Below are positions 1,303-45,223 of a stretch of 64,000 nt of DNA, piece by piece. How positions within the stretch are numbered: position 1 is the stretch's first letter; each line of letters opens with the position of its first letter. Where the stretch lies: positions 157,423-221,422 of the IMG/VR virus record IMGVR_UViG_3300024054_000362; one strand, written 5' to 3'. The notes under the pieces are model-generated. The model was not told where the DNA came from. It saw nothing but the letters and a program-made list of their open reading frames with translations, and did no database searches. The translations under genes were made by a program, and so were the position numbers.

Positions 1303-1575
1303 TTGTGTATAGTCGAGAACAAGATGATTGCCGCGATCGAGCTACCAGACAAGCTGTGCGTGATCCGTTGGGTAGGTCGTGAACGTCTTCACGTAGCCGT
1401 AGTAACCGTCTGTGGCACCAAAATGAACGTCGACAGAGGCGTAGTGCAAGTACCGGACTTCGTTCTCGATGGTCGGCCCGTCATGAGCTTCTCCGACTTC
1501 GACGGCCAGGGCCGTCGTCCGCTCAAGATCTGCGAAACCTGCAAGAACGCGATCGCGGCTGCGATCAAGGGCTGA
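1303..1575 (+). CDS. hypothetical protein
   Basis: ORF with C-terminal CxxC; start uncertain. Confidence 0.4.
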   Translation: MCIVENKMIAAIELPDKLCVIRWVGRERLHVAVVTVCGTKMNVDRGVVQVPDFVLDGRPVMSFSDFDGQGRRPLKICETCKNAIAAAIKG

Positions 1576-2320
1576 CGCGCGGGTTCAGTAGTCGATCGCG
1601 CAGCGCCAGTTGCTTGGCGGCGCGAAGCGCTAGGGCGCTGATGCCGATGACGGCGACGAGGCCGAGTGTGCCGATGGCCAACTTGGTGTTGGGCGACATG
1701 CCTGCGATCGGTGTCGGGGTTGCGGTCGTCAGGACTGCGTTGGCGAGCTGAGGGCCTGCATTCGCGGCACCGGCCACGGTGAAATGAACGCCGTCGGAGG
1801 TGTGCTCAGCGTCGCGTGTCAGGTTGCGTGCATCGATCGTGTGATCGACACCGAAGACGTTTTGCATCACCTGCAACAGGGTCGGTGCCCCTTGCGTGTA
1901 ATGGTCGTTTGTGTACGACGGTGGCCCGATCGCGAAGACCTCTGCTCCCATCGCGCGATACGCATCGCGGATCTTCGTCATCGCGTTCGTAGTTTGTGCA
2001 AGCGCGGCAGCCGTCAGGCCTTGATCGATATCGTTCGTACCGAGCATGACGATGACCTTGCTCGGACGAAACGTACGGTCGCTTGCGAGAAGGCCCGCGC
2101 TGTCTTCGTTTGAGAAGAAGCTCTGTGCCGAGCGACCGACGCGCGCATCGATGCGGACAGCTTGCGCGCCACCGTTGAGCAACTGCTGACCTACGATCTC
2201 GCCGGGCGCCGACGACGCCGTAACACGTTTGGCGAGATCGACGATCGTCGGGCCGCTATCGCTGCCTGGATGCGACAAGCTGTCGCCGAAGATGATGATG
2301 CGTTCACCGACGACGTTCAC
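1565..2320 (-). CDS. SGNH/GDSL hydrolase with C-terminal TM anchor
   Basis: FGDSL, VMLGTND and DGVHF blocks; GTG at 2320 with GGAGG; C-terminal hydrophobic helix and basic tail. Confidence 0.85.
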   Translation of the reverse strand: MNVVGERIIIFGDSLSHPGSDSGPTIVDLAKRVTASSAPGEIVGQQLLNGGAQAVRIDARVGRSAQSFFSNEDSAGLLASDRTFRPSKVIVMLGTNDIDQGLTAAALAQTTNAMTKIRDAYRAMGAEVFAIGPPSYTNDHYTQGAPTLLQVMQNVFGVDHTIDARNLTRDAEHTSDGVHFTVAGAANAGPQLANAVLTTATPTPIAGMSPNTKLAIGTLGLVAVIGISALALRAAKQLALRDRLLNPRVSP

Positions 2321-3272
2321 GGCGCCTCCCACGCAACACCGCCGTGGTGGCGAACTTTTTTGCGAGACGGATAGCACCGTAACCAAGGCCGACGAAGCCG
2401 CCTACGAGAAGGAGGCCCGCAAGAAACTGTCGACCGCTCGTTTGTGCGGGCTGCCCAGGTACGTTTGTGCAGATCGGCAGACTGGCGGACCAAACTGGAC
2501 GCAGGCTTTGCGCAATGATGCCGTTGGCGTCGTAGACCGGATTGCCGAAGACCTTGCGAGCGCGTTCGATCAGTTGCTGACCTTCGAACGAATTTGCGTC
2601 CAAACCAAGCTTTCGAAACTGCGCCGTCTTCCAGTGATCGACACCGGGAATTGGCCCAACCCAGTAACTGCCGCCCGACTGCGTGCAACCTGTCCGTTTT
2701 TTGCCGAATGCCTCACACAAAACTCGTTCCATCGGAACCGGGAAGAACGCGCGAAACTCAAGGCCGTCCTGATCGTCGGCGCCGAGGTTGATGTTCTCGC
2801 TCTTGCCGCTCATGACGAGATCGGCGAGTAGAGTTGTCAGAACGCTTGGATCGCGACTTGTTGCTGCGAAGCGGTTGCCGATGTTGCCGTGACCGGGAAC
2901 GTTGATCTCGCCGTAGAGTTTGGACGGCTGTGTAAACAGGAGCAGGCCGTTGACGTCCGTCTTGCGGCGCGCGGCCTGGTTGACGGCGACCTCGCCGACG
3001 GCGACACGTTCTTCGACGGTGCCGTCACCGACCTCGCTGTGCATATAGCGCGCGAGCGTATACGTCAACAGTGTGAGCGGCTTGTCAGCAGGCCAGAAGC
3101 CAGATGCTTGGAGCTGTTTCTCCGCGCTCGCACGCATGGCTTCCGGGTCGCAGCGAATCTCTCCTAGCTCGTCGGTACGACAGCCCGAATTCAGGATTCG
3201 AAGATCGGCGGGACCACCGCGCATCGGCGCGAACTTCGGGTGCCACGTCGGGTAGCAATCAAGCACGGCCAT
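2304..3272 (-). CDS. SleB/Hydrolase_2-like cell-wall hydrolase with C-terminal TM anchor
   Basis: TLARYMHSEVGDGTVEERVAVGEVAVN resembles the SleB catalytic Glu helix; ends TM + VLRGRRRERRR. Confidence 0.65.
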   Translation of the reverse strand: MAVLDCYPTWHPKFAPMRGGPADLRILNSGCRTDELGEIRCDPEAMRASAEKQLQASGFWPADKPLTLLTYTLARYMHSEVGDGTVEERVAVGEVAVNQAARRKTDVNGLLLFTQPSKLYGEINVPGHGNIGNRFAATSRDPSVLTTLLADLVMSGKSENINLGADDQDGLEFRAFFPVPMERVLCEAFGKKRTGCTQSGGSYWVGPIPGVDHWKTAQFRKLGLDANSFEGQQLIERARKVFGNPVYDANGIIAQSLRPVWSASLPICTNVPGQPAQTSGRQFLAGLLLVGGFVGLGYGAIRLAKKFATTAVLRGRRRERRR

Positions 3273-3957: not shown

Positions 3958-3958
3958 T

Positions 3959-4597: not shown

Positions 4598-4630
4598 GTT
4601 GCCTCAATCCTACACCGGAAACAGCACCTT

Positions 4631-4646
4631 GATCGCGCGAACGATC
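4631..4646. promoter_or_regulatory. GATCGC-N4-RCGATC palindrome
   Basis: GATCGCGCGAACGATC between divergent genes. Confidence 0.6.
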
Positions 4647-4664
4647 GCGCAGTAAGGTCCCGCG

Positions 4665-9700: not shown

Positions 9701-9732
9701 TGTCCGCGTACTTCGAATGGTATCATGCTGCG

Positions 9733-10308
9733 GTGCCGCGCCACGTGATCACCGCGCCGGACGATCCTCCGACGATGACCTGTCCTTCGGGACCGATGGT
9801 CTATCTCGCAGGCCCGATCCAGGGCTCGGCGAACTGGCAGATGGAGGCGATCCAAATTCTTGATGATCTGGCGCCTGAGCTTCACGTCGCGTCGCCGCGG
9901 GCGAAGGACTTCAAGGGTGGCGCCGAGAGGTTTCTTGCGTGGGAGCAGCAGGCACTTGTTCGTGCGGCGGCGGACGGCGTCGTGTTGTTCTGGTTGGCGA
10001 AGGAGACCAAGCATCACTGCAGTCGACCGTATGCTGCGAACGCACGCTTCGAACTGGGCGAGCTGGCCGTGAAGGCGGCCACAGGTCTTTTGTGCGTCGT
10101 CGTTGGAATCGAACAAGGTTTCCCGGGCGGGAAGTACTTGCAGCGTCGGTTGACACTCTCGTACCCACAGATTCCGATCTGTCGAACACTTCGTCAGACG
10201 TGTGCGGTTGCGGCCGAGCGTGCTTGCGTCGACACGCTCTCAGCGGCGCTTCCACGATCGTTGGCCGAGCTGTTCGTGGTGCCGTCGTTCGGCCGGAACA
10301 ACGGTTAG
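9733..10308 (+). CDS. nucleoside 2-deoxyribosyltransferase-like protein
   Basis: VYLAGPIQG..WQ, WE..AL, VVLFW, RFELGE; start uncertain. Confidence 0.7.
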   Translation: MPRHVITAPDDPPTMTCPSGPMVYLAGPIQGSANWQMEAIQILDDLAPELHVASPRAKDFKGGAERFLAWEQQALVRAAADGVVLFWLAKETKHHCSRPYAANARFELGELAVKAATGLLCVVVGIEQGFPGGKYLQRRLTLSYPQIPICRTLRQTCAVAAERACVDTLSAALPRSLAELFVVPSFGRNNG

Positions 10309-10697: not shown

Positions 10698-10958
10698 TTA
10701 CCGATGGCGACGGCGACGGGCGATCTTCTTGAGGGCCATCATCTTGCCGCCGCTTCCGACGACCTTGTACGACGTCTTGCGCCCGCGCTTCAGCGGACAG
10801 ACGCGGATTTTGCCGACGGGGCAGTAGCGACCTTTGCCCTTGTAGCGGCGGCCACCGATCTTGATGCTGCAGTCGCTGGCCGTGAACGTTCGGCAGTAGG
10901 CCGACTTGCCGTGCCGAGCAGCCGTGAACCGACGACGACGCTTTCTGCGCTTTGCCAT
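10698..10958 (-). CDS. small Arg/Lys-rich protein
   Basis: MAKRRKRRRR...ARRRRHR, four Cys. Confidence 0.6.
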   Translation of the reverse strand: MAKRRKRRRRFTAARHGKSAYCRTFTASDCSIKIGGRRYKGKGRYCPVGKIRVCPLKRGRKTSYKVVGSGGKMMALKKIARRRRHR

Positions 10959-10997: not shown

Positions 10998-11013
10998 GAT
11001 CGCGCGAGCGATC
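10998..11013. promoter_or_regulatory. GATCGC-N4-RCGATC palindrome
   Basis: GATCGCGCGAGCGATC, followed after 5 nt by TACCGT. Confidence 0.7.
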
Positions 11014-11075
11014 GGGGGTACCGTTCAGGCACCTCGCTCGACTTCGTCGAGCCCGGCTACGGCTAGGAGGCGATC

Positions 11076-11426
11076 ATGGCTCTGGTTCTGAAACGCGAAG
11101 GCGCGTCGCCCAATCTTCTGAAGTACAGCGTCGTGGCCGACGCCGAGGGCGGTGAAGTCGTGTTGAGCCGTGATGCCTTGATTCGAGACACCGTACGCGG
11201 ACCCTTGCAGACGTACGTCGAACGCGGTGTTCGCGTCGACGATCCCTGCCGCTACCTCCTGTGCAACCCGTCGATGCGGACTTTCGTGACGCCACGGACG
11301 TTCGCGCGAGTTGCTGTCGACGCGGTCACCGAAGGTCCGTCGTCGGCAGTCGCCTTCAAGATCATGGCAGAGCCCAACGCGACTGCGATCGTTGCGCTCG
11401 AATTTCGACACACACTCGCAGCGTAA
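11076..11426 (+). CDS. hypothetical protein, possibly structural
   Basis: AGGAGG RBS; first gene downstream of the palindrome. Confidence 0.6.
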   Translation: MALVLKREGASPNLLKYSVVADAEGGEVVLSRDALIRDTVRGPLQTYVERGVRVDDPCRYLLCNPSMRTFVTPRTFARVAVDAVTEGPSSAVAFKIMAEPNATAIVALEFRHTLAA

Positions 11427-12336: not shown

Positions 12337-12519
12337 ATGTTAGCGATGACGTTTAGTGGTCCGCGTGGCGGACACGGTGGAGGGCACGGTGGTGGCGGAC
12401 ATGGCGGTGGACACGGCGGTGGCGGTTTCCGTCGCGGCGGCGGTTTTCGTCGCGGCGGTGGATGGTGGCCCAACTACTACGGCTACGGTCCTGAGGTTGT
12501 AGTCCTCCCGCCCGTATAG
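12337..12519 (+). CDS. Gly/His-rich small protein with MLA start
   Basis: GGGH and RRGGG repeats; AGGAGG RBS. Confidence 0.55.
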   Translation: MLAMTFSGPRGGHGGGHGGGGHGGGHGGGGFRRGGGFRRGGGWWPNYYGYGPEVVVLPPV

Positions 12520-12616
12520 ACGGACTGTCAGTTCACGATCCGAATGCCGACCGGTGAGCAGATCATCGTGGTTGGTCCGTGTCCGACGGCGCTGACCCAA
12601 CCCGTCAACGCGTTGA

Positions 12617-13306
12617 TCACGCCGCGCTGAGCGTTGTCAGCCGGCGTGCCGCGATCAACCAATCGGTGGCTTCATCCGGGATGGCTGTGTGTTCGGCGTG
12701 CGAGAGCGTGCGCCACGACGGTGGTACGTATCGTCGAGGGCTGGTGTTGTTGACGTGCGTCGATGCGATCAGGAAGGTCCGTGCAGGCATCGCTGGGCGT
12801 TCACGGTGTGCGTTGCACCAGAGGACGTCTTCGCCCGAGTCGACGTCATCGAAGGGATGCTTGTGCCAGAGGTCACGTAGGTATAGGAGCGACGCACCAA
12901 CAGCTCCGGGAAGCTCGGCCGAATATGTGTACTGCCAGTAGTCGCCGGTTCGCAGGTCGAAGAACGGAAGTGTCCGTAGTCCTGAAACTGCGACACCGCC
13001 CGCACGAAGGACGCCAACCTGCTCTTGAAGTCGCCACGGTGCGTACCAATCGTCGTCATCCCAGTGCGCCACGATGGTGCCGCGAGCGTGCGTGAGCCCG
13101 AGGTTGCGTTTGGCGCCGAGTCTGAGGCCGTCTGTTTCGATGAACCGGATGCGTTCGTCGTTTGGCAGCAGTGACGCGATTGGTCGTGGTCCGACGACGA
13201 TCAGCTCACGATTGTCGTAGGTCTGTGCCTGCCAGCAGCGGAGCGTGAGAGGAATCCAGAGGGCGCGCCGAACGGTCGTCGGCATGATCGCACTTACGAG
13301 TGTCAT
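12617..13306 (-). CDS. GT2 glycosyltransferase
   Basis: VSAIMPT, QTY.NRELIVV, GAKRN, HWDDDDWY, GED. Confidence 0.9.
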   Translation of the reverse strand: MTLVSAIMPTTVRRALWIPLTLRCWQAQTYDNRELIVVGPRPIASLLPNDERIRFIETDGLRLGAKRNLGLTHARGTIVAHWDDDDWYAPWRLQEQVGVLRAGGVAVSGLRTLPFFDLRTGDYWQYTYSAELPGAVGASLLYLRDLWHKHPFDDVDSGEDVLWCNAHRERPAMPARTFLIASTHVNNTSPRRYVPPSWRTLSHAEHTAIPDEATDWLIAARRLTTLSAA

Positions 13307-13345
13307 CGTTGAAATCGGCGGTGAGGATCTTCATCATACCGTTCG

Positions 13346-13996
13346 ATGCAGGTGATCGTCAGCATGACGTCGATTCCGGCGCGCAACGGCCGACTCGCGT
13401 CGACGCTCGCCTCGTTGCAATCACAGACACGGCTGCCAGACGAGATTCGGCTCTACCTCGGGCCTGGATGTGCGCTCGTCGCAGACGTGACGTGCGTCGA
13501 TGTTGAAGATCGCGGGCCGATCACCAAGTTGTCAGCGGTCGTGGATCCAGAAATTCCTGACGACGCGTTGATTGTTACCGTCGACGACGACATCCTCTAC
13601 GAACCGACTTGGCTGGAGACGTTGGTGGCTGCCGCTGAAGCGTCGCCGGGAGCGGTAGTTGGACGTTCGGGCTGGTTGGTTGCAGACTTCCTGCGTAGCG
13701 AGCATCACGGCTACTTCATCTGGGCGCAGGAAGACACGTGCGACGTCCTAGAAGGCTGGGCGGGCGTTGCCTATCGCAAGAGCTTCTTCGACGGATCCGT
13801 ACTCGAACCGCCGCCGGAGTTTCGACTTGTCGATGACGTTTGGATCTCTGGTTACCTCTATCGGCGTGGTATCGAACGTCGCATCGTTCGTCCACCGATG
13901 GCCATCCCCGATCCGAAGGGTCTGCCGGGTCTTCACAACAGGTCTGACTTCGTCAAACTCAACCGCAAAGCCGCACGGATCGCCTTCGCACCATGA
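13346..13996 (+). CDS. GT-A glycosyltransferase
   Basis: VSMTSIPAR, DRGPITKL, IVTVDDDILY, VDDVWISG. Confidence 0.85.
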   Translation: MQVIVSMTSIPARNGRLASTLASLQSQTRLPDEIRLYLGPGCALVADVTCVDVEDRGPITKLSAVVDPEIPDDALIVTVDDDILYEPTWLETLVAAAEASPGAVVGRSGWLVADFLRSEHHGYFIWAQEDTCDVLEGWAGVAYRKSFFDGSVLEPPPEFRLVDDVWISGYLYRRGIERRIVRPPMAIPDPKGLPGLHNRSDFVKLNRKAARIAFAP

Positions 13997-16148: not shown

Positions 16149-16212
16149 GGTTTCTCCTGTGCCGTAGCCGGATCCCGCAAAATGCGGGACGAGGTTCCAT
16201 GAAGCTACACCC

Positions 16213-16228
16213 GATCGCGCGAGCGATC
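16213..16228. promoter_or_regulatory. GATCGC-N4-RCGATC palindrome
   Basis: GATCGCGCGAGCGATC; on minus strand followed after 5 nt by TAGCTT. Confidence 0.7.
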
Positions 16229-16910: not shown

Positions 16911-16927
16911 GGTCCAAGCCTATCATC

Positions 16928-16943
16928 GATCGCGCGAGCGATC
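16928..16943. promoter_or_regulatory. GATCGC-N4-RCGATC palindrome
   Basis: GATCGCGCGAGCGATC; on minus strand followed after 5 nt by TAGGCT. Confidence 0.7.
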
Positions 16944-16996
16944 ACGACTCAGCCTTTGTGCTTCCCCATCGCGGATCCCGTAGTAGGGTCGCCGAC

Positions 16997-17904: not shown

Positions 17905-17906
17905 GG

Positions 17907-18344: not shown

Positions 18345-18375
18345 TGGGTCAGCTCCTTGCTCTACAACCTACCAC

Positions 18376-18391
18376 GATCGCGTGCGCGATC
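18376..18391. promoter_or_regulatory. GATCGC-N4-RCGATC palindrome
   Basis: GATCGCGTGCGCGATC; on minus strand followed after 4 nt by TAGGTT. Confidence 0.65.
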
Positions 18392-18392
18392 G

Positions 18393-22374: not shown

Positions 22375-22443
22375 CTTCTTGGTCCTTGTTGAAGTTGCCC
22401 CACAAGTCGGCGACGCCGTCTCGATGGGTGTTTCTTTCAAGAA

Positions 22444-22489
22444 GATCCCACGAGCGATCGAGGTCGTCAAGATGATCGCTGCTGCGATC
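22444..22489. promoter_or_regulatory. two GATCGC-N4-RCGATC-like sites
   Basis: GATCCCACGAGCGATC (22444) and GATCGCTGCTGCGATC (22474) between the Arg-rich operon and the divergent HTH gene. Confidence 0.55.
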
Positions 22490-22550: not shown

Positions 22551-23258
22551 ATGAAACCGTTCAAACCTGGTAGCGATCCGCGTAAAGTCTTCAAAGGAGA
22601 ACACCGCGAACGAAAGCCAACTCGACTGTTCACGTTTGATGACCTTGCTACAGCGGCTGTCGAGGCGCCAGCAACGACACGCAAGAAGCTGCGAACGACG
22701 ACGAACGCGAGGACCGTAGCGCTCTACATCGTTGACGCACTGGCCCGTGGCTCTGTCCGACTTTCGGACGAAGAAGCTGTGCAAGCGCTCGCAGGAGCCG
22801 CGACGTTGAAGGAATGGCGAGGTCGTTGGCCACGCTTCGATCTATATCGATGCGGCTACCCCGACTGCGTGAACACGCTCCTCGATGCTGGCCTGTGTGT
22901 TAGCCATGGTGGGTCGGCTCGGCCGACCGTGAAGATTGAGGGTGACCACTTCGTGATGTGGACGGGCCGAGCGTACACACCGATCTGTCGGGTGATTTTT
23001 GGCGTGATCGATTCGGGTGCGGTCGAGCACATTGATCAGAACAGCTGGAACAACCACCCCGACAACCTCATCGCGCCCGCCGACGTTCACGTCCGTTCGA
23101 CGAGACGCAACCGTTGGTCGTATGGCTACGCCGAGCTGGGTGACCTGTTCGGCTTATCGGTCGACGGCACACGACAAGCTGCGTCGCGTGGACTCTTCGA
23201 TCCGGCGTCGCTCGACAGCGTGACGAGCTTCTGGTTCCTTCGACAGACCCCGCGTTAG
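22551..23258 (+). CDS. putative DNA-binding protein (HTH-like ends, HNH-like centre)
   Basis: EHIDQNSWNNHPDNL HNH-like motif; YAELGDLFGLSVDGTRQ HTH-like segment; CxxxxC...C..H. Confidence 0.55.
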   Translation: MKPFKPGSDPRKVFKGEHRERKPTRLFTFDDLATAAVEAPATTRKKLRTTTNARTVALYIVDALARGSVRLSDEEAVQALAGAATLKEWRGRWPRFDLYRCGYPDCVNTLLDAGLCVSHGGSARPTVKIEGDHFVMWTGRAYTPICRVIFGVIDSGAVEHIDQNSWNNHPDNLIAPADVHVRSTRRNRWSYGYAELGDLFGLSVDGTRQAASRGLFDPASLDSVTSFWFLRQTPR

Positions 23259-23525: not shown

Positions 23526-24416
23526 TCACTCTCCTCCCAAGAACGTATCATCGGAAACGATCAGGACCGCCGGTCGAAGTCCTCGACGTTCAGCGGTAGC
23601 ACCGACAGCGTGACGTTCGTGGACAGGCGCGATGGTCGCCCAGCTGTAGAGGTCGCGAACGTACTCATGGTCGCTGTTGGACGCGACGATTGTGGCACCG
23701 CGATCGTGTGCGGCACGAAGGGCCGTGGCGAGCGTGACGTGATCGTCGTCGGAGAAGCCTCCCGCCGTGTACTTGTCGAACGTCTCGTAGTAAGGCGAGT
23801 CGGCGTAGACGACGTCACCTGCTTGCGCGGCAGCGATCGTATCTCGGAAATCGGCGTGGCGAACGTCGGCGCCGCGAAGGGCGTGCGCGACGATCGCCAG
23901 GCTTTCGGCGGTGGGAACGCTCGCGCGACTGCGATCACCGCCGTGCGGGACGTTGAACTTGCCCTTGCTGTTTTCACGGTAGAGACCGTTGAAGCCGAAC
24001 CGGTTCAGGTACAGGAACCGAGCCGCCGCGAGGACCGGGCTACGCGACTCCTCGGCGCGGATGCGGATGTAGCTCTCTTTGTCGGTGCCACGATCCACGA
24101 GCGTCTTCAGCGCCCACGCGACCGATGCGGAGGTCTTCCGGATCGTCTGATACATCGAGATCAGCGGCTTGCAGTTGTCGCCGAGCACCATGTCAGGAAG
24201 CCCGAGATCGAGCGCGACCGCACCGCCACCGAGGAACGGTTCGACGTAACGTCCTCGGGTGACGGCGAGTCGTGCATGAATCGCGGGCGCCAAGAGCGGG
24301 ACCAGCCATCGTTTGCTTCCGACCCACTTGAGTGGCGGGGTGCAGCCGACGCGCGGTGGAAACACGTTCGCTGTGGGAACGGTCGATAGCGGGTTGGGCG
24401 TTGCGGTCGTCATCAT
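23526..24416 (-). CDS. dam: Dam-family DNA adenine methyltransferase
   Basis: PLKWVGSK, YVEPFLGGGAV, FNGLYRENSKGKFNVP; motif IV reads DSPY. Confidence 0.85.
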   Translation of the reverse strand: MMTTATPNPLSTVPTANVFPPRVGCTPPLKWVGSKRWLVPLLAPAIHARLAVTRGRYVEPFLGGGAVALDLGLPDMVLGDNCKPLISMYQTIRKTSASVAWALKTLVDRGTDKESYIRIRAEESRSPVLAAARFLYLNRFGFNGLYRENSKGKFNVPHGGDRSRASVPTAESLAIVAHALRGADVRHADFRDTIAAAQAGDVVYADSPYYETFDKYTAGGFSDDDHVTLATALRAAHDRGATIVASNSDHEYVRDLYSWATIAPVHERHAVGATAERRGLRPAVLIVSDDTFLGGE

Positions 24417-24582
24417 AGAGCCCCCTAGAGCTGTGCGAACAGGTACAGCGCGAGCACGATCAAGGTCAGCGTGACAGCGTAGCGTAGAAGCTGTTCGAGT
24501 AGACCTGGACTTTGTAGATACGGATCGCTGCTGCGAACGAGCAAGTCGCGCCACAGGTGGTTACGGGTCTCGCGGCTGAGTT

Positions 24583-34793: not shown

Positions 34794-36776
34794 TTAGAAG
34801 TCGGCGTTCAGGTCGACTTCGCCTTCGACGCCCTGTTGGTACGCCGACGCACGGCGTTCGAAGAAGTTGGTCATCTCTTGGACGTCCTGCAGGTCCATGA
34901 ACCCGAACGGATTCTTGACGTTGAACGTCTTGCTGTAGCCGAGCGCCGCAAGACGCTGATCGGCGACGAACTGGAGGTACGTCACGACGTCGTTGACCGA
35001 GAGGCCGGCGACGCCACCTGCCAGGAGGTCTTCCGCGAAGGCGGCTTCGCAGTCGATAGCTTCGTCGATCATCTGTCGGACGTCGCGTTCCAGTTCGGCG
35101 TCGAACAATTCGGGTTCTTCGCGGCGGACGGTGGCGACGACCGCGAACGCGAACGTCATGTGACAGTTGCCAGTGATCGAGACTTTGTTGTTGTAGCGCA
35201 TCACAAAAGCGCCGGTTGGGACGGTTACACAGTGAACGTTCCCGTCGTATGCGACGATGTCGTCGAGGATCGACCCGCACGACACGATATCGACGTCGTG
35301 GATCCACGTACGGTACATCGTCGAGTACGTATCCGATCTGTGATCTTCTTCGATGCCGAACGTGGCGTGTCGACCGCCTAGCGTTGCCACAGCTTGAACG
35401 ACGTCGACGTTGTCGCGGAACTTGGACGAGTAGTAGATGTAGTAGCCGTCCATTGGATCGGCTGGCGTATGTCCGTCCCAGTGCCGAAGTTCTTCGACGA
35501 AGTCAGTAGCCCACTTGGTGTCGATCTTCGTCAAGTCGACCCACGTGTTCAGGTGCTTGCTGAGAGGTGTAGAAGCGGGGACGTTGATGAAGAACTCGTT
35601 CCAGCCGTTCTCGTCGCAGTCAACTTTGTACTTCCAACCGAGACGCGTGACGAGATCTGTCAATCTCGCGATTTTGCGATCACGCCGCAGAGAGAACTTC
35701 GCCGGGACCGTCCCGCAACGCTCGCCGGTATACCGCTCGCTGAGGTGCCCGTCGGCTTGGAACGCGATCAAGAAACGTTGCTCGTCGGTAAGCTCCGGTG
35801 CGACCTGTAGCGCGTGTCCTGCCACTGGAAGCTTCTTCTTGCCGTTGATCTTGAATTCAGACGCCGGCTGCTTGGACCACTGCTTCTGATAGTCCCAGCG
35901 CTGCACGATGTCGTGATCCATTGTCATCATCTGATCGACACCACCCTTGCGGTGTCGCAGATGTCGAACAGATCCTCGGTGCGGCTTGTGAAGCACCCTG
36001 AGCGGCTTCACGAATGAAATTTCATGAGTCTGAAGATCGAACTGGGCGACCTGTGTGTCTTCCGTCAGCTCACGGAAGTCGACCCAACCCTTGGGGGTTA
36101 GCACTTCGGTGCCGTCAACCATACAACTCTCATCTCTAAACACCCAGTTGGTGCCGTCGGCGAGGCCGGGCAGGAGGCCCTTCGAGCGCAGGAAGTAGAC
36201 GTAGGCGAACGCGCCGAAGAAGAACAGACCTTCGATGCACGCGGCGAAGCAGATCAGATTCGAGAGAAACTGTCGACGCTGGCGGGGCGTGCTGATCCGA
36301 TCGAGCGATTGGATCGAGTCGATCCAGCGAAGACAGAAGTCAGCTTTCTGTTTGATCGACGGGATCGTCTCGACGGCGGCGAACGCTTTCTGTCGCTCGC
36401 TGTGTTCGGGGACGTAGGTGTCGAGCAGGGTCAGATAGAACTGGACGTGGAGCGCTTCCTCGAAGAGCTGTCGCGACAAGTACATCCGCGCCTCGGGGGC
36501 GTTGACGTGCTTGTAGAGGTTCAGCACGAGGTTGTTCGCGACGATCGAGTCGCCCGTCGCGAAGAACGCGACGAGCCGTTGGATCAGGTGACGTTCAGCC
36601 GACGTCATCTTGGTGAGGTCGGCGACGTCCGTCGAGAAGTTGATCTCCTCGACGGTCCACGTGTTCTTGATCGCCGCGCGGTACATCTCGAAGAACTGTG
36701 GATAGATCATCGGCCGCAGCGTCAGACACATCCCAGGATCGAGGAGACGCGCTGGTCGCTGCATGTCGATGTTCAC
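34794..36776 (-). CDS. nrdB: ribonucleotide reductase class I beta subunit with intein
   Basis: WTVEE, FFATGD, EALH..FY, IEGLFF, RDES|intein|CH, NFFE. Confidence 0.93.
   Translation of the reverse strand: MNIDMQRPARLLDPGMCLTLRPMIYPQFFEMYRAAIKNTWTVEEINFSTDVADLTKMTSAERHLIQRLVAFFATGDSIVANNLVLNLYKHVNAPEARMYLSRQLFEEALHVQFYLTLLDTYVPEHSERQKAFAAVETIPSIKQKADFCLRWIDSIQSLDRISTPRQRRQFLSNLICFAACIEGLFFFGAFAYVYFLRSKGLLPGLADGTNWVFRDESCMVDGTEVLTPKGWVDFRELTEDTQVAQFDLQTHEISFVKPLRVLHKPHRGSVRHLRHRKGGVDQMMTMDHDIVQRWDYQKQWSKQPASEFKINGKKKLPVAGHALQVAPELTDEQRFLIAFQADGHLSERYTGERCGTVPAKFSLRRDRKIARLTDLVTRLGWKYKVDCDENGWNEFFINVPASTPLSKHLNTWVDLTKIDTKWATDFVEELRHWDGHTPADPMDGYYIYYSSKFRDNVDVVQAVATLGGRHATFGIEEDHRSDTYSTMYRTWIHDVDIVSCGSILDDIVAYDGNVHCVTVPTGAFVMRYNNKVSITGNCHMTFAFAVVATVRREEPELFDAELERDVRQMIDEAIDCEAAFAEDLLAGGVAGLSVNDVVTYLQFVADQRLAALGYSKTFNVKNPFGFMDLQDVQEMTNFFERRASAYQQGVEGEVDLNADF
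35166..36125 (-). mobile_element. intein (320 aa) in nrdB
   Basis: RDES|CMVDGTEV...ITGN|CH; FQADGH and HWDGH LAGLIDADG-like motifs. Confidence 0.88.
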
Positions 36777-39154
36777 TGGCAGGCCTCACAGCTCTCGGGA
36801 TTCTCCAACGAACATGCGATCGCGGCCTCGTCAGGCATCACGGATGCCACGTTCGTCTTCGCGATCCTGGTTGCCGGGCGCGAGCGTAGGTAGTACGTCG
36901 TCTTCAGGCCGGCCTTCCAGGCGTAGAAGTACATCGACGAGAGCGCTCCGATGTTCGGGTTCTCGACGAACAGGTTCAGCGACTGGCTCTGATCGATGAA
37001 GGCGCCACGCTCGGCGGCCATATCGATCAGCGCACGCATCGGCAGCTCCCATGCGGTGCGGAACACCTTGCGGACGTCTTCGGGGACTTCCGCGAGCGTG
37101 TGAACCGAGCCCTCGGCGTTCTTGATCCGCGTCCGTGTGTGCTCCGTCCAGAGGCCGAGACGCTTGAGCGCGTCGACGAGGTAACGGTTGACCTGCAGGA
37201 AGTCACCGGACATCGTCTCGCGCTTGAAGAGGTTCGAGACCTGTGGCTCGATGCACTCGTAGCAGCCTGCGATCGACGCGATGGTCGCGGTCGGCGCGAT
37301 CGCGATCGTCAACGAGTTGCGAAGGCCCGTCTTCTTGATCCGCTCGCGTAACACGTTCCAGCGAACCGGATCGCGAGGGACGACGTTCCACGCGTCGAAC
37401 TGCAACTCGCCGTGTGCGGCGCGCGTATCATCGAACGTCTCGTGCTTGCCCTTCTCGACGGCGAGGTCGGCGGACGTCGTCAGCGCGTGGAAGTAGATCT
37501 CCTCCGAGATCCGTTTCGAGAGGTCTCGGGCTTCCGACGAGTCGAACGCCCAGCCGAGTTGGAAGAAGACGTCCTGCAGTCCCATGATCCCGAGGCCCAC
37601 GGGACGCCATCGCATGTTCGAGCGCTTGGTGCTCGGGATCGTGTAGAAGTTGACATCGATGACGAAGTCGAGCTGACGGATCGCGGTACGCACCGTACGC
37701 GCCAGCTTGGTGAAGTCGAACTTGCCGTCGATGACGTGGCGACCGAGGTTGATCGAGCCGAGGTTGCAGACCGCGGTCTCGTCTTGCGACGTGACTTCGA
37801 GGACCTCCGTGCAGAGATTGGACAGATGCACGACGCGATCGGGCGACCACGTCTGGTTGCACGCGCGGTTACACGCGTCCTTCCAGGTCATCCAACCGTT
37901 GCCGGTCTGCGCGAGCGTACGCATCATCTTGGCGTACAGGTCGCGTGCCTTGACGGTCTTCGCGGCGAGGCCGGCAGCTTCGGCCTTGATGTACTGCCTT
38001 TCGAATTCCGCACCCCAGACGTCACAGAGCGTCGGGACCATCTTCGGATCGAAGAGGCTCCACGGTTCGTCCGCTTCGACGCGGCGCATGAACAGATCCG
38101 GAACCCAGTTCGCGAGATGAAGGTTGTGGGTTCGGCTGCCCTCATCGCCCGTGTTGTTGCGCAGCTCCAGAAACTCCTCGATGTCGGCGTGCCACGTCTC
38201 CAGGTACACGCACGCTGCGCCCTTGCGCTTGCCGCCCTGGTTGACTGCTGCGACGCTTGCGTCGAGCGTCTTCAGCCACGGCACGATGCCGTTCGAGTGG
38301 CCGTTCGTGCTGGAGATCAGTGAGCCGCGTGACCGCACGCGGTGGTACGCCAGGCCGATGCCGCCGGAGAACTTCGACAACAACGCGACGTCGGAGTACC
38401 GCCCGTAGATGTTCTCCAGGTGATCTTTTGGCGAGTCGAGCAGGAAACAGCTCGACAGTTGCTCATGCGCTGTACCGGCGTTGAACAGCGTCGGCGAGCC
38501 CGGGAGATACTCCAGTGCGGAGAGGAGCGCGTACAGCTCCAACGCTTCGGAACATGTCGAGGTGAGCGCGCACGCGATGCGCAAGAAGAACTGCTGCGGC
38601 GTCTCGATCACCTGTCGCGACGTCGGATGACGAAGCAGGTAGCGATCGTAGAGTGTGCGCAGGCCGAAGTACTCGAAGTTGTCGTCGGCGAGCGGGTTGA
38701 CCGCATCGTTGAGCTTGCGCGTGTGGTGTCCGACGAACGTTGCCAACCGTTCGTTGATGAAGCCGAGCTGCACGCCTGCGTCGATCGACTGGCTGAAGGC
38801 GTGGATCTTTTGGCTTTGTACTTCCTTGGCAATGTAGTTCGCCAGAATGCGTGCCGCAAGACGGCTGTACTGCGGCTCTTCGGCGGTGAGACCGGCCGCG
38901 GTCTGGATCGACAAGAGATCCAGCTCTCGTGTAGTGGCGCCGTCGTAGAGGCCGCTGATGGTTCGTGTGGCGACCTGGAGCGCGTCGACGTCCTTGAGAC
39001 CTCCGCAGCACCGACTGATCGCACGCACGATCTTATTGATGTCGGCGATCTCCGATGAGCCGTCACGCTTGGTGACCCTCATCGTGGTGTGCGTCTTTAG
39101 ATCGGGGTTGGTGAGAGTTGTTGCCCGTTGGCTGTACGACCGCGTAACAGACAT
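36773..39154 (-). CDS. nrdA: ribonucleotide reductase class I alpha subunit with ATP cone
   Basis: VTKRDG, PTLFNAG, LSSCF, SNLCTE, VCNLGS, APTAT, TYYLR, C-terminal CEAC. Confidence 0.95.
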   Translation of the reverse strand: MSVTRSYSQRATTLTNPDLKTHTTMRVTKRDGSSEIADINKIVRAISRCCGGLKDVDALQVATRTISGLYDGATTRELDLLSIQTAAGLTAEEPQYSRLAARILANYIAKEVQSQKIHAFSQSIDAGVQLGFINERLATFVGHHTRKLNDAVNPLADDNFEYFGLRTLYDRYLLRHPTSRQVIETPQQFFLRIACALTSTCSEALELYALLSALEYLPGSPTLFNAGTAHEQLSSCFLLDSPKDHLENIYGRYSDVALLSKFSGGIGLAYHRVRSRGSLISSTNGHSNGIVPWLKTLDASVAAVNQGGKRKGAACVYLETWHADIEEFLELRNNTGDEGSRTHNLHLANWVPDLFMRRVEADEPWSLFDPKMVPTLCDVWGAEFERQYIKAEAAGLAAKTVKARDLYAKMMRTLAQTGNGWMTWKDACNRACNQTWSPDRVVHLSNLCTEVLEVTSQDETAVCNLGSINLGRHVIDGKFDFTKLARTVRTAIRQLDFVIDVNFYTIPSTKRSNMRWRPVGLGIMGLQDVFFQLGWAFDSSEARDLSKRISEEIYFHALTTSADLAVEKGKHETFDDTRAAHGELQFDAWNVVPRDPVRWNVLRERIKKTGLRNSLTIAIAPTATIASIAGCYECIEPQVSNLFKRETMSGDFLQVNRYLVDALKRLGLWTEHTRTRIKNAEGSVHTLAEVPEDVRKVFRTAWELPMRALIDMAAERGAFIDQSQSLNLFVENPNIGALSSMYFYAWKAGLKTTYYLRSRPATRIAKTNVASVMPDEAAIACSLENPESCEACQ

Positions 39155-39270: not shown

Positions 39271-39286
39271 GATCGCGCGCACGATC
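39271..39286. promoter_or_regulatory. GATCGC-N4-RCGATC palindrome upstream of nrdA
   Basis: GATCGCGCGCACGATC in the intergenic gap. Confidence 0.55.
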
Positions 39287-43245: not shown

Positions 43246-43457
43246 TTCGAAATCCTTGCTCGGGGGTACTTCGGCTCACCGTCGACCGCAACGACTTCGC
43301 TCGGAGCAATCCAACCACAACCATCGCACTCGAACTCTTCGTGCATGCGAAGCACGCCGTCGCCGTCGAGGTCTTTCTCGCGAAGGATCGTCTCGACGTC
43401 GTTGCCGCAAGCGCGATGGATTTCTTTCATTCGCCCTTCTCCCAGTCGTAGTCCCAA
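43242..43457 (-). CDS. small Zn-ribbon protein
   Basis: HRACG...CDGCG. Confidence 0.45.
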   Translation of the reverse strand: MGLRLGEGRMKEIHRACGNDVETILREKDLDGDGVLRMHEEFECDGCGWIAPSEVVAVDGEPKYPRARISK

Positions 43458-45223
43458 AGGGACCCGTGGTAGTCGCTGTCGCCGTCGTCGAGATCGGGAT
43501 GGTCCATCATCAACGCCTTCGCGAGCGCGTCGAAGTCGTCGGGACCGTCAGTGATACGCGCGAAGGCCGCAGCGAGGACACCGATCGTCGACTCGGCCGC
43601 GGGCACACCCATGCGATACGCGACATCGCACTTGTCCTGCAGCGCTGCAAGGATCTTGCGGTCGATTTCGTGATCGATGATCACGTACGTGGCCGCCATC
43701 GGGCGTAGCGGTGAGAACGTACGCATCTCAGCCTGTGCCACCACCGACGGCGTGAAGTCCAACTCGGCGAACACACAGTGGCGGGCCGCGCTGAGATCGA
43801 TGCCGACTTGACCGACGGACAACGTGATACAGAGAGGCGCAGGCTTCTCGTAGGTACGCCAACGATCGAAGATGTCCTCACGGATCGACATTGGCGTCTC
43901 GCCGCCGCCGGAGACGACGACGCCCGGGAAGCCGGCTTCCGAGAGCCTGTGCTCGATCTGAAGGGCGACGTCGCGGTGCCAGCTCCAGATCACGACCTTC
44001 TCACCGCTTTGCAGGATTCGCTTGGCGACGTCGACGGCTACGGGGATCTTGTGCTTGGCGAGGAGCCGTCGGAACCGCGCCATCGCACCGATGGCAGTGG
44101 TTCGCTTGTTGTGGTCGCGAACGCGTTCAGCGTCCTTCTCGATTTCGAATTGCTGCGTTTCCGAAACGACCACTGCCTCGACCGCGCGTTCGATCGCCGG
44201 CAGCTCGCCCGAGACGTCCTGCCACGTGCGGCGGATCATGATCTCGGAGAGGCGTTCTCGAAACTCGTCCTCATTGGAGGCGCCGTCGTACTCGTAGCCG
44301 TGCGTTCCGGGATGCGCGTCGCAGTAGCGTACGGCGTAGTCGAAGAACTTGCCGAACGCAGCAGGCGCCACGCACGACAGCGTCGTGAAGAGCCCCGACG
44401 GTCTATTCCAAATCGGCGTTCCCGTTGCTGCGATCACGCGTTCGGCAAGGTTAGACACGAACGTCACTGCTTCGGCGCGGCGCGAGACGCGTTGGGAGAT
44501 GAGATGGATCTCATCGAGCACGAGCGTTCCGATACGGCGACCGTTCAGCTCCATCCAAGTTTCGAGAATGTCGTAGTTGCAGAAGATCAGCTTGGCGTCG
44601 GCGAGCTGCTTCGGATCGAACCGCTTGCCTTCGATCAGGTCGAAGCCGCGATCGCGTCTGGGTGCGACGGGCTTCTTGGGATTGGTCCGCTCGATCATTC
44701 GGCCGCTGAGGACGACGGGACGTACGTCAGGCCAGCGTCGACGCATCCAAGCAAGCCAAACTTCACGTGTCGCGAGCGGTGCGACGACGAGCATCGGTCC
44801 CAGTTCAGGATCGTGTGATGACGTCGCCGTCAGGGTCTTACCGACGCGCATCGCGTCGCCAAGGAGCGTACCGCGACGTGCACGGATGAAGTCGCGGCCG
44901 TCGTGTTGATAGGAGCGAAGGGTCCAGCCGTTCGGACTGGTGGTCGCGTCGAAGGCCGCTCGATCGCGGCAGCGATCACTTTCCGATCGCTGCCGCGATC
45001 GGAGGTCGGCCAAAAAAACAGCGGCCTCCGGGTGCGTCTTGGCGAGAAGCGGCAGATGGGAACGGTGCGCTAGCGGGCCGATGCGCGCGTCGTAGCCGAC
45101 GGACGGAGCGATCGCGATCTCCGGGGTCCATGCCGCCGGGATCGCGTACCAGTCCTGTCGTTTTGGGTGCGGTCGGATGACGACGGGGCTCGCCGTCGCC
45201 GCGACCGCGGCCGATGCTCTCAT
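43427..45223 (-). CDS. SNF2-family helicase
   Basis: LRSYQ, DAMRVGKT, LDEIH, ATGTPIWN, VGIDLSAA, QAEMR. Confidence 0.88.
   Translation of the reverse strand: MRASAAVAATASPVVIRPHPKRQDWYAIPAAWTPEIAIAPSVGYDARIGPLAHRSHLPLLAKTHPEAAVFLADLRSRQRSESDRCRDRAAFDATTSPNGWTLRSYQHDGRDFIRARRGTLLGDAMRVGKTLTATSSHDPELGPMLVVAPLATREVWLAWMRRRWPDVRPVVLSGRMIERTNPKKPVAPRRDRGFDLIEGKRFDPKQLADAKLIFCNYDILETWMELNGRRIGTLVLDEIHLISQRVSRRAEAVTFVSNLAERVIAATGTPIWNRPSGLFTTLSCVAPAAFGKFFDYAVRYCDAHPGTHGYEYDGASNEDEFRERLSEIMIRRTWQDVSGELPAIERAVEAVVVSETQQFEIEKDAERVRDHNKRTTAIGAMARFRRLLAKHKIPVAVDVAKRILQSGEKVVIWSWHRDVALQIEHRLSEAGFPGVVVSGGGETPMSIREDIFDRWRTYEKPAPLCITLSVGQVGIDLSAARHCVFAELDFTPSVVAQAEMRTFSPLRPMAATYVIIDHEIDRKILAALQDKCDVAYRMGVPAAESTIGVLAAAFARITDGPDDFDALAKALMMDHPDLDDGDSDYHGSLWDYDWEKGE
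44961..45001. repeat. 17-bp inverted repeat made of two palindrome motifs
   Basis: CGATCGCGGCAGCGATC-ACTTTCC-GATCGCTGCCGCGATCG. Confidence 0.7.

What the first reader, a model, noticed from the sequence alone, without database searches (positions are those of the whole stretch)
1551..45001. Recurrent palindrome GATCGC-N4-RCGATC, often just upstream of a TAnnnT box
Seen at 1551, 4631, 10998, 16213, 16928, 18376, 22474, 39017, 39271, 44962 and 44985, with near-matches at 22444 and 24523. Three copies are the identical 16-mer GATCGCGCGAGCGATC. Most are intergenic and upstream of putative virion genes. In four cases TAnnnT follows 4-5 nt later in the direction of transcription (TACCGT, TAGCTT, TAGGCT, TAGGTT). 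Inference: an element-specific late promoter or operator. Each copy holds two GATC sites, so the encoded Dam-like MTase could gate binding.
Basis: partly seen in the sequence, partly recalled or inferred. Interest (0 to 1): 0.72.

Follow-up and report, generated by a model that had tools for sequence, protein, structure and literature searches.

The report
Repeated operator-promoter palindrome of a jumbo phage
A 16-base palindrome, repeated about 40 times in this uncultivated 221-kb lake phage and kept in its relatives, marks a set of host-type promoters, many for leaderless genes, and is most likely the docking site of one phage regulator.

Summary
The window is the last 64 kb of a complete 221-kb virus record that holds 41 sites. 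GATCGC-Nk-GCGATC occurs 36 times at k=4 and at most 4 times at any other spacing. Thirty-one of 41 sites are intergenic, though only 11.5% of the genome is.

About half the sites lie 1-7 nt upstream of an extended -10 box (TGnTAnnnT) with no -35. An ATG or GTG usually follows exactly 6 nt later, with no Shine-Dalgarno, so these transcripts would be leaderless. Other sites lie at about +6 to +21 of full TTGACA/TAGCTT promoters or flank a -35.

The sites fill divergent gene gaps and are nearly absent from convergent ones. Related phages (49-66% GC) keep them at orthologous positions.

Best reading: an operator for a phage-encoded dimeric regulator, probably a repressor, acting on host-RNAP promoters. 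No regulator was identified, and no transcript data exist.

"Late promoter" and "virion genes" are not supported: the neighbouring genes are replication genes and ORFans. A Dam methylase is encoded, but methylation gating remains untested.

The parts
1551..1566 (.). Exact palindrome GATCGCGGCTGCGATC at the 3' end of a small ORF, in a convergent gene context. No promoter-like box lies beside it.
4631..4646 (.). Variant palindrome (right half ACGATC) in a divergent gap, flanked by two outward -10 boxes. TAAGGT at 4653-4658(+) is followed 6 nt later by ATG 4665. TAGGAT at 4607-4612(-) is followed 9 nt later by ATG 4597. G001 keeps a palindrome at the same distance from both orthologs.
10998..11013 (.). 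Exact palindrome in the divergent gap between 10698-10958(-) and 11076-11426(+). TACCGT lies at 11019-11024(+), with no TGn. The G001 ortholog of the downstream gene has no palindrome.
16213..16228 (.). Exact palindrome upstream of gene 15753-16148(-). The -10-like TAGCTT lies at 16202-16207(-). The downstream gene has a leader. Conserved in G001.
16928..16943 (.). Exact palindrome in a divergent gap. The extended -10 TGaTAGGCT (hexamer 16917-16922, minus strand) is followed 6 nt later by GTG 16910, a leaderless start of ORF 16227-16910(-). Conserved in G001 for both flanking genes.
18376..18391 (.). Exact palindrome followed by the extended -10 TGgTAGGTT (hexamer 18366-18371, minus strand), then a Shine-Dalgarno sequence and GTG 18344 of gene 17907-18344(-). 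The half-sites, TA...T, the SD and the start codon are invariant in five genomes. N4, the inner -10 bases and the flanks vary.
22444..22489 (.). Double site. A one-mismatch copy at 22444-22459 and an exact copy at 22474-22489 bracket a -35-like TTGACG at 22465-22470(-). The region lies between 22177-22497(-) and 22551-23258(+). The whole arrangement is kept in L012, L013, L014 and G001.
24523..24538 (.). One-mismatch copy (GATCGCTGCTGCGAAC) inside a small ORF upstream of the Dam gene. Its function was not assessed and it may be a chance match.
39017..39032 (.). Variant copy (ACGATC) inside the ribonucleotide reductase ORF 36773-39154(-). No promoter context. Probably not functional.
39271..39286 (.). 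Variant copy (ACGATC) in the gap 116 nt upstream of the RNR start codon. No adjacent -10. Not conserved in G001.
44961..45001 (.). Two exact copies (44962-44977 and 44985-45000) that together form a 17-bp-stem inverted repeat. The RNA fold is -39.6 kcal/mol with z = -6.8. It lies inside the 5' part of the SNF2-like helicase ORF 43427-45223(-). G001 partly keeps it.
23526..24416 (-). Dam-type (D12 class) N6-adenine DNA methyltransferase gene. It would methylate the two GATC sites in each palindrome. It is kept at this locus in every relative, including the motif-less L253.
45527..45730 (+). Small HTH_17 (Xis/MerR-like) DNA-binding protein, 56% identical in G001. It is a candidate trans-factor only, and binding was not tested.
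22551..23258 (+). Conserved 235-aa protein, transcribed divergently from the double site. Its only resemblance is a weak one to HNH_3 endonucleases. It does not look like a classical repressor.

Best explanation
The palindrome [c]GATCGC-N4-GCGATC[g] is the operator half of a repeated operator-promoter cassette in a complete, uncultivated 221-kb lake-water phage and its relatives.

The promoter half is a host sigma-70/sigmaA-type extended -10 box (TGnTAnnnT) with no -35 element. In most cases the start codon lies exactly 6 nt downstream, so the transcript would begin at the start codon and be leaderless.

In the commonest arrangement the palindrome covers about -32 to -17, which is where RNA polymerase must sit. 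At other promoters it lies at about +6 to +21, or it flanks the -35. The two half-sites are centred 10 bp apart, the geometry of a dimeric helix-turn-helix protein.

I infer that one phage-encoded dimeric regulator binds all of the roughly 40 sites. I infer that it is most likely a repressor that shuts a regulon of about 25-30 small transcription units by blocking polymerase. Most of these units are ORFans, and some border the replication module.

Shown here: the motif, its spacing rule, its position relative to genes and -10 boxes, and its conservation. Inferred: that host RNAP reads these promoters, that the transcripts are leaderless, that a protein binds the palindrome, and that its effect is negative.
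For: Enrichment and the spacing rule. The window has 11 sites against 0.09 expected. The genome has 41 against 2.1 under an order-5 Markov model. Counts are 36 at N4 and at most 4 at any other spacing.

Placement. 31 of 41 sites are intergenic. There are 15 sites in 35 divergent gaps, 15 in 292 co-directional gaps and 1 in 35 convergent gaps.

The composite. 21 site-strands in G000 and 14 in G001 have TAnnnT 3-14 nt downstream, mostly 4-5 nt, usually with TGn and an RTG 6 nt later. Random positions do this 0.4% of the time. Of 24 strict TGnTAnnnT-N5-8-RTG(ORF) sites in the genome, 15 carry the palindrome. The bases upstream of the palindrome show no -35-like conservation.

Leaderless starts. 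34 independently called gene starts have TAnnnT 5-7 nt upstream, against 2.8 expected. Only 3 of these 34 have an SD-like motif, against 183 of 329 other genes.

Single palindromes serve two divergent -10 boxes at genome 16660, window 4631 and G001 69062.

Conservation. G001 (median 56% amino-acid identity) has 44 sites under the same spacing rule. Of 20 orthologs of palindrome-preceded genes, 16 keep a palindrome at nearly the same distance, against 10 of 121 controls. A five-genome alignment, including a contig of 49% GC, keeps the half-sites and TA...T while N4 and the flanks vary.

Sign of regulation. The +6 to +21 arrangement behind TTGACA-N17/18-TAGCTT is conserved. TGn is present in 8 of 10 palindrome-bearing leaderless promoters and in 9 of 24 without a palindrome. 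That points to intrinsically strong promoters that need shutting off.

No Sigma70_r2 match, T7-like RNAP or Rpb1-type RNAP was detected.
Against: No protein was shown or predicted to bind the site. The only DNA-binding domains that Pfam detects and that G001 also keeps are two small HTH_17 proteins, a type that more often binds as a monomer or to direct repeats.

No RNA data exist, so transcription starts, leaderless status and temporal class are all inferred.

The palindrome-to-box distance varies from 3 to 14 nt. That fits steric repression, but it does not prove it.

About a quarter of the sites lie in ORFs or have no recognisable promoter nearby.

The gene calls are my own crude ones. Divergent phage RNA polymerases could escape Pfam.
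Confidence: 0.55

Rival explanations
1. The palindrome is an activator site that stands in for the missing -35. A phage-encoded dimer bound at about -30 and -20 would recruit or remodel host RNAP at promoters that have only a -10. This would resemble the T4 MotA box at -30 or the mycobacterial PafBC -26 element, and would define a middle or delayed class.
For: These promoters lack any -35. In the main spacing class the distal half-site sits near -30. A separate class of full promoters with a strong TTGAC -35 exists in the long co-directional blocks and could be the true early class.
Against: The distance to the -10 varies continuously from 3 to 14 nt, which is unusual for an activator that contacts RNAP. 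The conserved +6 to +21 copies and the copy inside a promoter spacer cannot activate. Palindrome-bearing promoters have the better core, with TGn in 8 of 10 against 9 of 24. Nine of 24 strict promoters of this type lack the palindrome.
Confidence: 0.2
2. The palindrome acts as a hairpin rather than a protein site. It would be a PeSL-like terminator or attenuator placed in front of each promoter, or an RNA stability element. It might also serve as a recombination linker for gene-cassette shuffling.
For: Every copy can fold into a 6-8 bp stem with a tetraloop, at -10 to -13 kcal/mol. Like the PeSLs of T4-type phages, it precedes a host-type promoter in front of ORFans (PMC2839356, PMC4122927). 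The pair at 44961-45001 forms a very stable hairpin.
Against: No T/U run follows, and none of the copies is picked up as terminator-like. Fold z-scores are only -0.4 to -2.9. The sites are nearly absent from convergent gaps (1 in 35) and richest in divergent gaps, where nothing needs terminating. The stem sequence is invariant and shows no covariation, while the loop varies and has no strand preference. That points to sequence recognition on double-stranded DNA. There is no excess at boundaries between conserved and non-conserved genes against G001: odds ratio 1.0, p = 1.
Confidence: 0.07
3. Methylation switch, which could hold together with either protein model. The phage Dam methylase modifies the two GATC sites in each operator. 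The regulator or RNAP would then distinguish methylated from newly replicated DNA, coupling this regulon to replication or packaging.
For: A D12-class Dam gene is encoded. It is kept beside the conserved double operator in all relatives. Both half-sites always contain GATC. All four promoter-linked one-mismatch variants have their mismatch in the inner GC and leave GATC intact.
Against: There is no methylation or binding data. GATC is not over-represented once trinucleotides are accounted for, with obs/exp of 1.03, so about 2,500 other GATC sites exist. The motif-less sister contig L253 keeps Dam. The mismatch pattern is also what a GATC-rich background would give.
Confidence: 0.12
4. The sites are targets for a phage nuclease or nickase, for example the conserved HNH_3-like protein at 22551, and are not transcription sites.
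For: An HNH_3-like protein, supported by a weak lead only, is conserved next to the double site and the Dam gene.
Against: The tight, oriented link to -10 boxes and start codons and the bias to divergent gaps are not expected of nick or cleavage sites. The HNH assignment is below curated cut-offs.
Confidence: 0.03

Closest known systems
PeSLs (promoter-early stem-loops) of T4-type phages (PMC2839356, PMC4122927)
   Same: Dozens of copies per large phage genome of a short intergenic composite. A palindrome that can form a stem-loop sits beside a host-RNAP promoter, mostly in front of ORFans in variable regions.
   Different: A PeSL spans about 100 bp, with a variable polyG/polyC stem that terminates transcription, a full -35/-10 and an SD. 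Here the conserved part is only 6+6 fixed bases with an exact 4-nt spacer, plus an extended -10 without a -35 and mostly leaderless starts. These sites are nearly absent from convergent gaps and show no link to indel boundaries.
Stoperators of Cluster A mycobacteriophages such as L5 and Bxb1 (PMC9283540, PMC6550527)
   Same: One phage regulator with tens of near-identical binding sites spread across the genome in short intergenic spaces. The promoter style (TAnnnT, leaderless) also suggests an actinobacterial setting.
   Different: Stoperators are asymmetric and are bound by a monomeric repressor (PMC9283540). From my own knowledge, they are 13-14 bp long and stop elongation in one orientation only. 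The present site is a perfect dyad placed mainly on core promoters. No repressor has been identified.
Conserved inverted repeats (CIRs) bound by the phiC31 c repressor. This is from my own knowledge (Ingham et al. 1994, Wilson et al. 1995) and was not retrievable here.
   Same: An inverted-repeat operator of about 17 bp, found in many intergenic regions near early promoters of an actinophage.
   Different: The sequence differs. phiC31 is a 41-kb temperate phage with far fewer copies. Nothing about this comparison was tested here.
Upstream elements that replace the -35: the T4 MotA box with AsiA, and the mycobacterial PafBC -26 element. This is from my own knowledge.
   Same: A good -10 combined with a specific element just upstream in place of a -35.
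   Different: Those elements are asymmetric and sit at a nearly fixed distance. Here the element is a dyad at a variable distance, and it also occurs downstream of start sites.
Dam-sensitive promoters and operators (IS10 pIN, pap, agn43, Mu mom). This is from my own knowledge.
   Same: GATC sites lie inside a regulatory site, and a Dam-type methylase is present.
   Different: Those systems use one to three GATC sites at one locus and a known methylation-sensitive binder. Here there are about 40 loci and no evidence of sensitivity.

Membership tests
Sigma-70/sigmaA-type extended -10 promoter | A TAnnnT hexamer preceded by TGn one base upstream | tested here: met
   17 of 21 oriented sites in G000 and 11 of 14 in G001 have TGn before TAnnnT. 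Random positions reach the score threshold 0.4% of the time. TA...T is invariant in five genomes.
Sigma-70/sigmaA-type extended -10 promoter | Transcription starts about 7 nt downstream of the hexamer | not testable with these tools
   No RNA run could be listed. The DNA runs add nothing.
Leaderless mRNA | The start codon sits at the predicted +1 (6-7 nt after the -10) and there is no Shine-Dalgarno | tested here: met
   34 called starts have TAnnnT 5-7 nt upstream against 2.8 expected, 32 of them at exactly 6 nt. SD-like motifs occur in 3 of 34 against 183 of 329 other genes. The 5' ends themselves were not mapped.
Operator of a dimeric DNA-binding regulator | Dyad symmetry with fixed half-site spacing, repeated at promoters | tested here: met
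   36 sites at N4 against at most 4 at any other spacing. The same rule holds in G001. The centre shows no strand bias. The link to promoters is shown.
Operator of a dimeric DNA-binding regulator | An identified protein that binds the site | not testable with these tools
   Only candidates were found: HTH_17 proteins at window 45527-45730 and genome 70397-70624. The complex job with DNA was not folded.
PeSL (T4-type promoter-terminator cassette) | The stem-loop works as a terminator between transcription units | tested here: not met
   No T-run follows. Only 1 site lies in the 35 convergent gaps, against 15 in the 35 divergent gaps. The hairpins are weak. Function itself was not assayed.
PeSL (T4-type promoter-terminator cassette) | Copies flank insertions, deletions and replacements between related genomes | tested here: not met
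   In the comparison of G000 with G001 the odds ratio is 1.0 and p = 1.
Intrinsic terminator | A GC-rich hairpin followed by a U-run | tested here: not met
   Flanks are shown and the scan. No palindrome qualifies.
Stoperator (Cluster A mycobacteriophage) | An asymmetric site oriented with transcription | tested here: not met
   The site is a perfect dyad, and N4 shows no strand preference relative to the promoter.
Dam-gated regulatory site | A GATC methylase is encoded and GATC lies in the site | tested here: met
   PF02086 matches with E = 9.5e-41 at window 23613-24326(-). There are two GATC sites per palindrome.
Dam-gated regulatory site | Binding or activity depends on methylation state | not testable with these tools
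   No methylation or binding data exist. The motif-less contig L253 keeps Dam. GATC obs/exp is 1.03.
Host transcription-factor regulon motif | The motif recurs within cellular genomes | tested here: inconclusive
The 22-mer composite gives none.

The most novel reading that the evidence does not exclude
The roughly 40 operators form a replication-coupled switch. A phage regulator would read the Dam-methylation state of the two GATC sites in each palindrome. Fully methylated infecting DNA and freshly replicated DNA would then be transcribed differently. This would time a whole regulon of leaderless genes in a clade of jumbo phages that rely on host RNAP and, in this genome at least, also carry their own type I-C CRISPR-Cas system.
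Probability: 0.1. Interest if true: 0.75.

Novelty: new member of a known kind. Interest (0 to 1): 0.45.

Why it matters
The motif gives a first, testable map of transcription units for a clade of uncultivated freshwater jumbo phages in which most genes have no known relatives. It defines where promoters lie, which genes are probably leaderless, and which roughly 25-30 units share one control signal.

The promoter style (TAnnnT, TGn, leaderless starts) also hints at the host group, possibly Actinomycetota. That is my inference only.

The fixed 16-mer is a ready bait for finding the regulator by DAP-seq or a one-hybrid screen. It is also a sequence tag for recognising members of the clade in metagenomes. 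As a kind of element it is not new: repeated phage operators and promoter cassettes are well known.

Tried and rejected
- **Transcript evidence.** No RNA run could be listed for the locus.
- **Population variation.** Four DNA runs laid on window 12500-18499 hold mainly the same strain as fragments; the longest pieces listed match without other letters, one C>T aside. They gave no test of selection and no indel junctions.
- **Protein-DNA complex.** The job with HTH_17 x2 plus the palindrome was not folded. It is not evidence either way.
- **Virion genes.** PHROGs on 30 large or conserved proteins, plus Pfam Terminase_6N and Phage_capsid searches of the genome, found no virion module. The motif could therefore not be placed relative to late genes.
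- **Genes downstream of sites.** 20 were scanned with Pfam and only one matched, to DUF5661.
- **Further conserved small proteins.** About 30 more gave no new DNA-binding domain.
- **Phage polymerase or sigma.** Sigma70_r2, WhiB, T7-like RNAP and Rpb1 searches found none. The T7-like search has no positive control.
- **Nucleotide relatives.** None was found in the GenBank phage collection.
- **Cellular genomes.** The 16-mer gives scattered single hits only, and the 22-mer gives none, so there is no host clue. Cas7 homologs carried no organism names.
- **Known RNA families.** Rfam found none in the window.
- **Canonical scan.** The sigma-70 promoter scan found nothing above shuffles, and no palindrome was picked up as terminator-like.
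- **PeSL-style shuffling.** Rejected at this divergence.
- **GATC as a special signal.** Rejected: its abundance is compositional.
- **The 'GGATAGAAAC' motif.** This intergenic-enriched word turned out to be the end of the CRISPR repeat, not a -10 box.

Full report
**What the sequence is.** The window is the last 64 kb (bases 157423-221422) of a single 221,422-bp virus record with 61% G+C, rated 100% complete by CheckV. It comes from lake-water metagenomes. No phage in GenBank is similar at the nucleotide level. At the protein level the best matches to its DinG-like helicase are below 31% identity, to Bacillus SP-15, Listeria, Streptomyces and Arthrobacter phages. On the minus strand, window 18-45 kb holds a replication and nucleotide module:
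- PolA with a LAGLIDADG insert
- class I ribonucleotide reductase
- two helicases
- dTMP kinase
- a Dam-type methylase

Primase-like genes follow on the plus strand. These are not virion genes.

**Check of the observation.** All 11 sites are at the stated coordinates, against 0.09 expected from dinucleotide shuffles. Both near-matches carry one mismatch. Genome-wide there are 41 sites, against a mean of 2.1 and a maximum of 6 under an order-5 Markov model. Conditional on the abundant half-sites (399 GATCGC, 409 GCGATC), 0.74 pairs are expected per spacing. Observed counts are 36 at N4 and at most 4 at every other spacing from 0 to 24. Direct and everted arrangements show no comparable peak. 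Using my own crude gene calls, 31 of 41 sites are intergenic, although only 11.5% of the genome is. GATC occurs 2,534 times, but that is what its trinucleotides predict (obs/exp 1.03). It does not explain the palindrome.

**Anatomy.**
- Pooling both strands, the motif is cGATCGC-KSSM-GCGATCg.
- The outer C and G are present in about 69% of sites.
- The centre is G+C-rich and variable, most often GCGA/TCGC.
- The centre has no orientation preference relative to the neighbouring gene.
- Beyond that, the flanks are unconserved, and nothing resembles a -35.

**Adjacent -10 box.** On one side, and sometimes on both, about half the sites have TAnnnT 3-14 nt away. The modal distance is 4-5 nt, and TGn usually precedes the box. 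This holds for 21 site-strands in G000 and 14 in relative G001, against 0.4% of random positions. An ATG or GTG that opens a long ORF then typically follows exactly 6 nt later.

**Leaderless starts.** Independently of the palindrome, 34 of 363 called gene starts have TAnnnT 5-7 nt upstream, 32 of them at exactly 6 nt, against 2.8 expected. Only 3 of these 34 have a Shine-Dalgarno-like motif, against 183 of 329 other genes. Leaderless expression from -10-only promoters therefore appears to be a real feature of this phage. Ten of these 34 genes have the palindrome within 60 nt upstream.

**Other arrangements.**
- A second, conserved arrangement places the palindrome about 11 nt downstream of a full TTGACA-N17/18-TAGCTT promoter, at roughly +6 to +21 and ahead of an SD and ATG. 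Examples are genome 64137 and 66972, and G001 143238 and 140560.
- At window 22444/22474, an exact copy and a one-mismatch copy bracket a TTGACG -35.
- Single palindromes serve two divergent -10 boxes at window 4631, genome 16660 and G001 69062.

**Sites in the window.**

| Context | Sites |
|---|---|
| -10 box 4-6 nt away | 4631, 10998, 16213, 16928, 18376 |
| Flanks a -35 (with its partner 22444) | 22474 |
| No recognisable promoter | 1551, 39017, 39271, 44962, 44985 |

Site 39017 lies inside the RNR ORF. The pair 44962/44985 lies inside a helicase ORF and forms a 17-bp-stem hairpin of -39.6 kcal/mol.

**DNA signal or hairpin?** Three results favour a sequence read on double-stranded DNA at promoters:
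- Divergent gaps are rich in sites (15 in 35 gaps). Co-directional gaps have 15 in 292, and convergent gaps 1 in 35. That is the opposite of what a terminator would show.
- No T-run follows any copy, and no palindrome is picked up as terminator-like.
- The isolated hairpins fold at only -10 to -13 kcal/mol, with z-scores of -0.4 to -2.9.

In addition, the stem bases never covary, because they are simply invariant, while the loop varies. The window has no Rfam match.

**Conservation.**
- Helicase homologs at 60-78% identity lead to syntenic contigs (L012-L015, L252) that carry the palindrome at orthologous places. One of these contigs has only 49% G+C.
- A five-genome alignment upstream of the 'MPHV' gene (window 18376) has invariant half-sites, TA...T, SD and start codon. 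N4, the inner -10 bases and the upstream flank differ.
- Scanning IMG/VR for the exact 16-mer, then scanning whole records for the pattern, gave the counts below. The reversed-pattern control gave none.

| Record | Length | Sites |
|---|---|---|
| G001 | 195.8 kb | 44 |
| G002 | 91 kb | 20 |
| G003 | 35.7 kb | 7 |
| G004 | 64.8 kb | 11 |

- G001 shares only 175 of 363 genes with this genome, at a median of 56% amino-acid identity. It obeys the same spacing rule and has the same composites.
- Of 20 genes that have an upstream palindrome here and an ortholog in G001, 16 orthologs have one at almost the same distance, for example 30/30, 62/62 and 86/86 nt. The figure is 10 of 121 for genes without a palindrome.
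- A more distant syntenic contig (L253, helicase 53% identical) has none in 22 kb. The motif therefore marks a subclade.
- In cellular genomes the 16-mer appears only as scattered single hits, and the 22-mer composite not at all.

**Mechanism.** No Sigma70_r2 match, WhiB, T7-like RNAP or Rpb1-type RNAP was detected. The box TGnTAnnnT is the signature of a sigma-70-family holoenzyme, so host RNAP most likely reads these promoters. This is an inference. In the main spacing class the palindrome spans about -32 to -17, and its half-sites are one helical turn apart. A dimer bound there would occupy the polymerase's own footprint.

The same protein at +6 to +21, or around a -35, would also block transcription. 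One repressor is therefore the most economical explanation for all the arrangements. Two further observations fit this. The palindrome-to-box distance is continuously variable, which suits steric hindrance better than a precise activating contact. Palindrome-bearing leaderless promoters also have the stronger core, with TGn in 8 of 10 against 9 of 24.

An activator that replaces the -35, in the manner of MotA or PafBC, remains a serious rival. The sign of regulation cannot be settled without experiments.

**Candidate binders.** The binder is unknown. The Pfam-detectable DNA-binding proteins that G001 also keeps are two small HTH_17 proteins, at window 45527-45730 and genome 70397-70624. The 22551 protein resembles an HNH_3 endonuclease only weakly.

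**Dam.** The methylase is real and is kept at the same locus in all relatives. It is also kept in the motif-less L253. GATC richness is compositional. Among one-mismatch variants, the few that are linked to promoters retain both GATC sites, but a GATC-rich background would give the same pattern. Methylation gating is possible and untested.

**Comparison with known systems.**
- The closest kinds are the PeSL promoter/stem-loop cassettes of T4-type phages (PMC2839356, PMC4122927), the multi-copy stoperators of Cluster A mycobacteriophages (PMC9283540, PMC6550527) and, from my own knowledge, the phiC31 CIR operators.
- The element differs from PeSLs in having a short fixed dyad, no terminator features and no link to gene-content boundaries (odds ratio 1.0).
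- It differs from stoperators in being symmetric and centred on promoters.
- I file it as a new member of the known kind 'phage-specific repeated operator/promoter motif'.
- It is distinctive for combining a -35-less extended -10 with leaderless starts.

**Verdict.**

| Claim | Status |
|---|---|
| The observation | Confirmed and extended to the whole genome and clade |
| 'Promoter/operator' | Supported |
| 'Late' and 'virion' | Not supported |
| 'Dam gating' | Open |
| Interest | Moderate |

Noticed in passing
window 60383-63999, continuing at the contig's other end (L002:61-6250): The phage encodes a type I-C CRISPR-Cas system. In the window: cas3 with an HD domain (60383-62536), cas5c (62664-63299), and the N-terminal part of cas8c/Csd1 (63157-63999), which runs off the contig end. 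At the other end: the C-terminal part of cas8c (genome 61-1296) and cas7/Csd2 (1381-2562). An array of 27 or more variable 36-nt repeats ending in GGATAGAAAC follows at genome 2.7-6.2 kb. The split cas8c implies the linear record is a closed circle or is terminally redundant. No cas1, cas2 or cas4 was looked for.
   Followed up: partly
window 56835-56870: A solitary, degenerate copy of the CRISPR repeat (9 mismatches, ending GGATAGAAAT) lies far from the array. It could be a stray or regulatory repeat unit of the kind reported in phages as RNA anti-CRISPRs. That comparison is from my own knowledge.
   Followed up: no
L004:10690-10730 (genome ~50702), L009:10545-10610 (genome ~150559), genome 40721, 101980 and 110775; also G001 ~100720: A second conserved intergenic motif, GCTCTTGAC(W)WG, occurs mostly in the long co-directional gene blocks. 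At two places it forms its own palindrome, for example TAGCTCTTGACTTGTCAAGAGCTA. It looks like a strong -35 or a second operator family, and possibly marks a different temporal class.
   Followed up: partly
whole genome G000, e.g. window 9721-9735: About 9% of called genes (34 of 363) have TAnnnT exactly 5-7 nt before the start codon and almost never have an SD. This implies widespread leaderless expression, a style typical of Actinomycetota and Deinococcota hosts. The host assignment is my inference.
   Followed up: yes
window 27658-31347 (-): The PolA gene carries a LAGLIDADG homing-endonuclease or intein-like insert at residues ~217-393. Relatives carry inteins in the RNR and GP88 genes instead.
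   Followed up: no
window 44961-45001: Two palindromes form a 17-bp-stem hairpin (-39.6 kcal/mol, z = -6.8) inside the 5' part of the SNF2-like helicase ORF. G001 partly keeps it. Its role is unknown: it could be an internal operator or roadblock, or an RNA structure.
   Followed up: partly
L253 (sister contig, helicase 53% identical): This contig is syntenic (PolA, helicase, dTMP kinase, Dam, GP88) but has no GATCGC-N4-GCGATC sites in 22 kb. The operator and its presumed regulator are therefore specific to a subclade, which makes this contig useful for finding the regulator by comparison.
   Followed up: partly
L009:11581-12516 (genome 151581-152516): A tyrosine recombinase (Phage_integrase family) is encoded, and a Cro/CI-type HTH protein lies at genome 126642-126956. 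The phage may be temperate, or it may use the recombinase to resolve dimers.
   Followed up: no
window 49484-50881 (+): A 465-aa protein matches a thymidylate-synthase PHROG only in its first ~180 residues. Together with the helicase's distant similarity to that of Bacillus phage SP-15, this raises the possibility of modified bases in the DNA. This is speculation.
   Followed up: no
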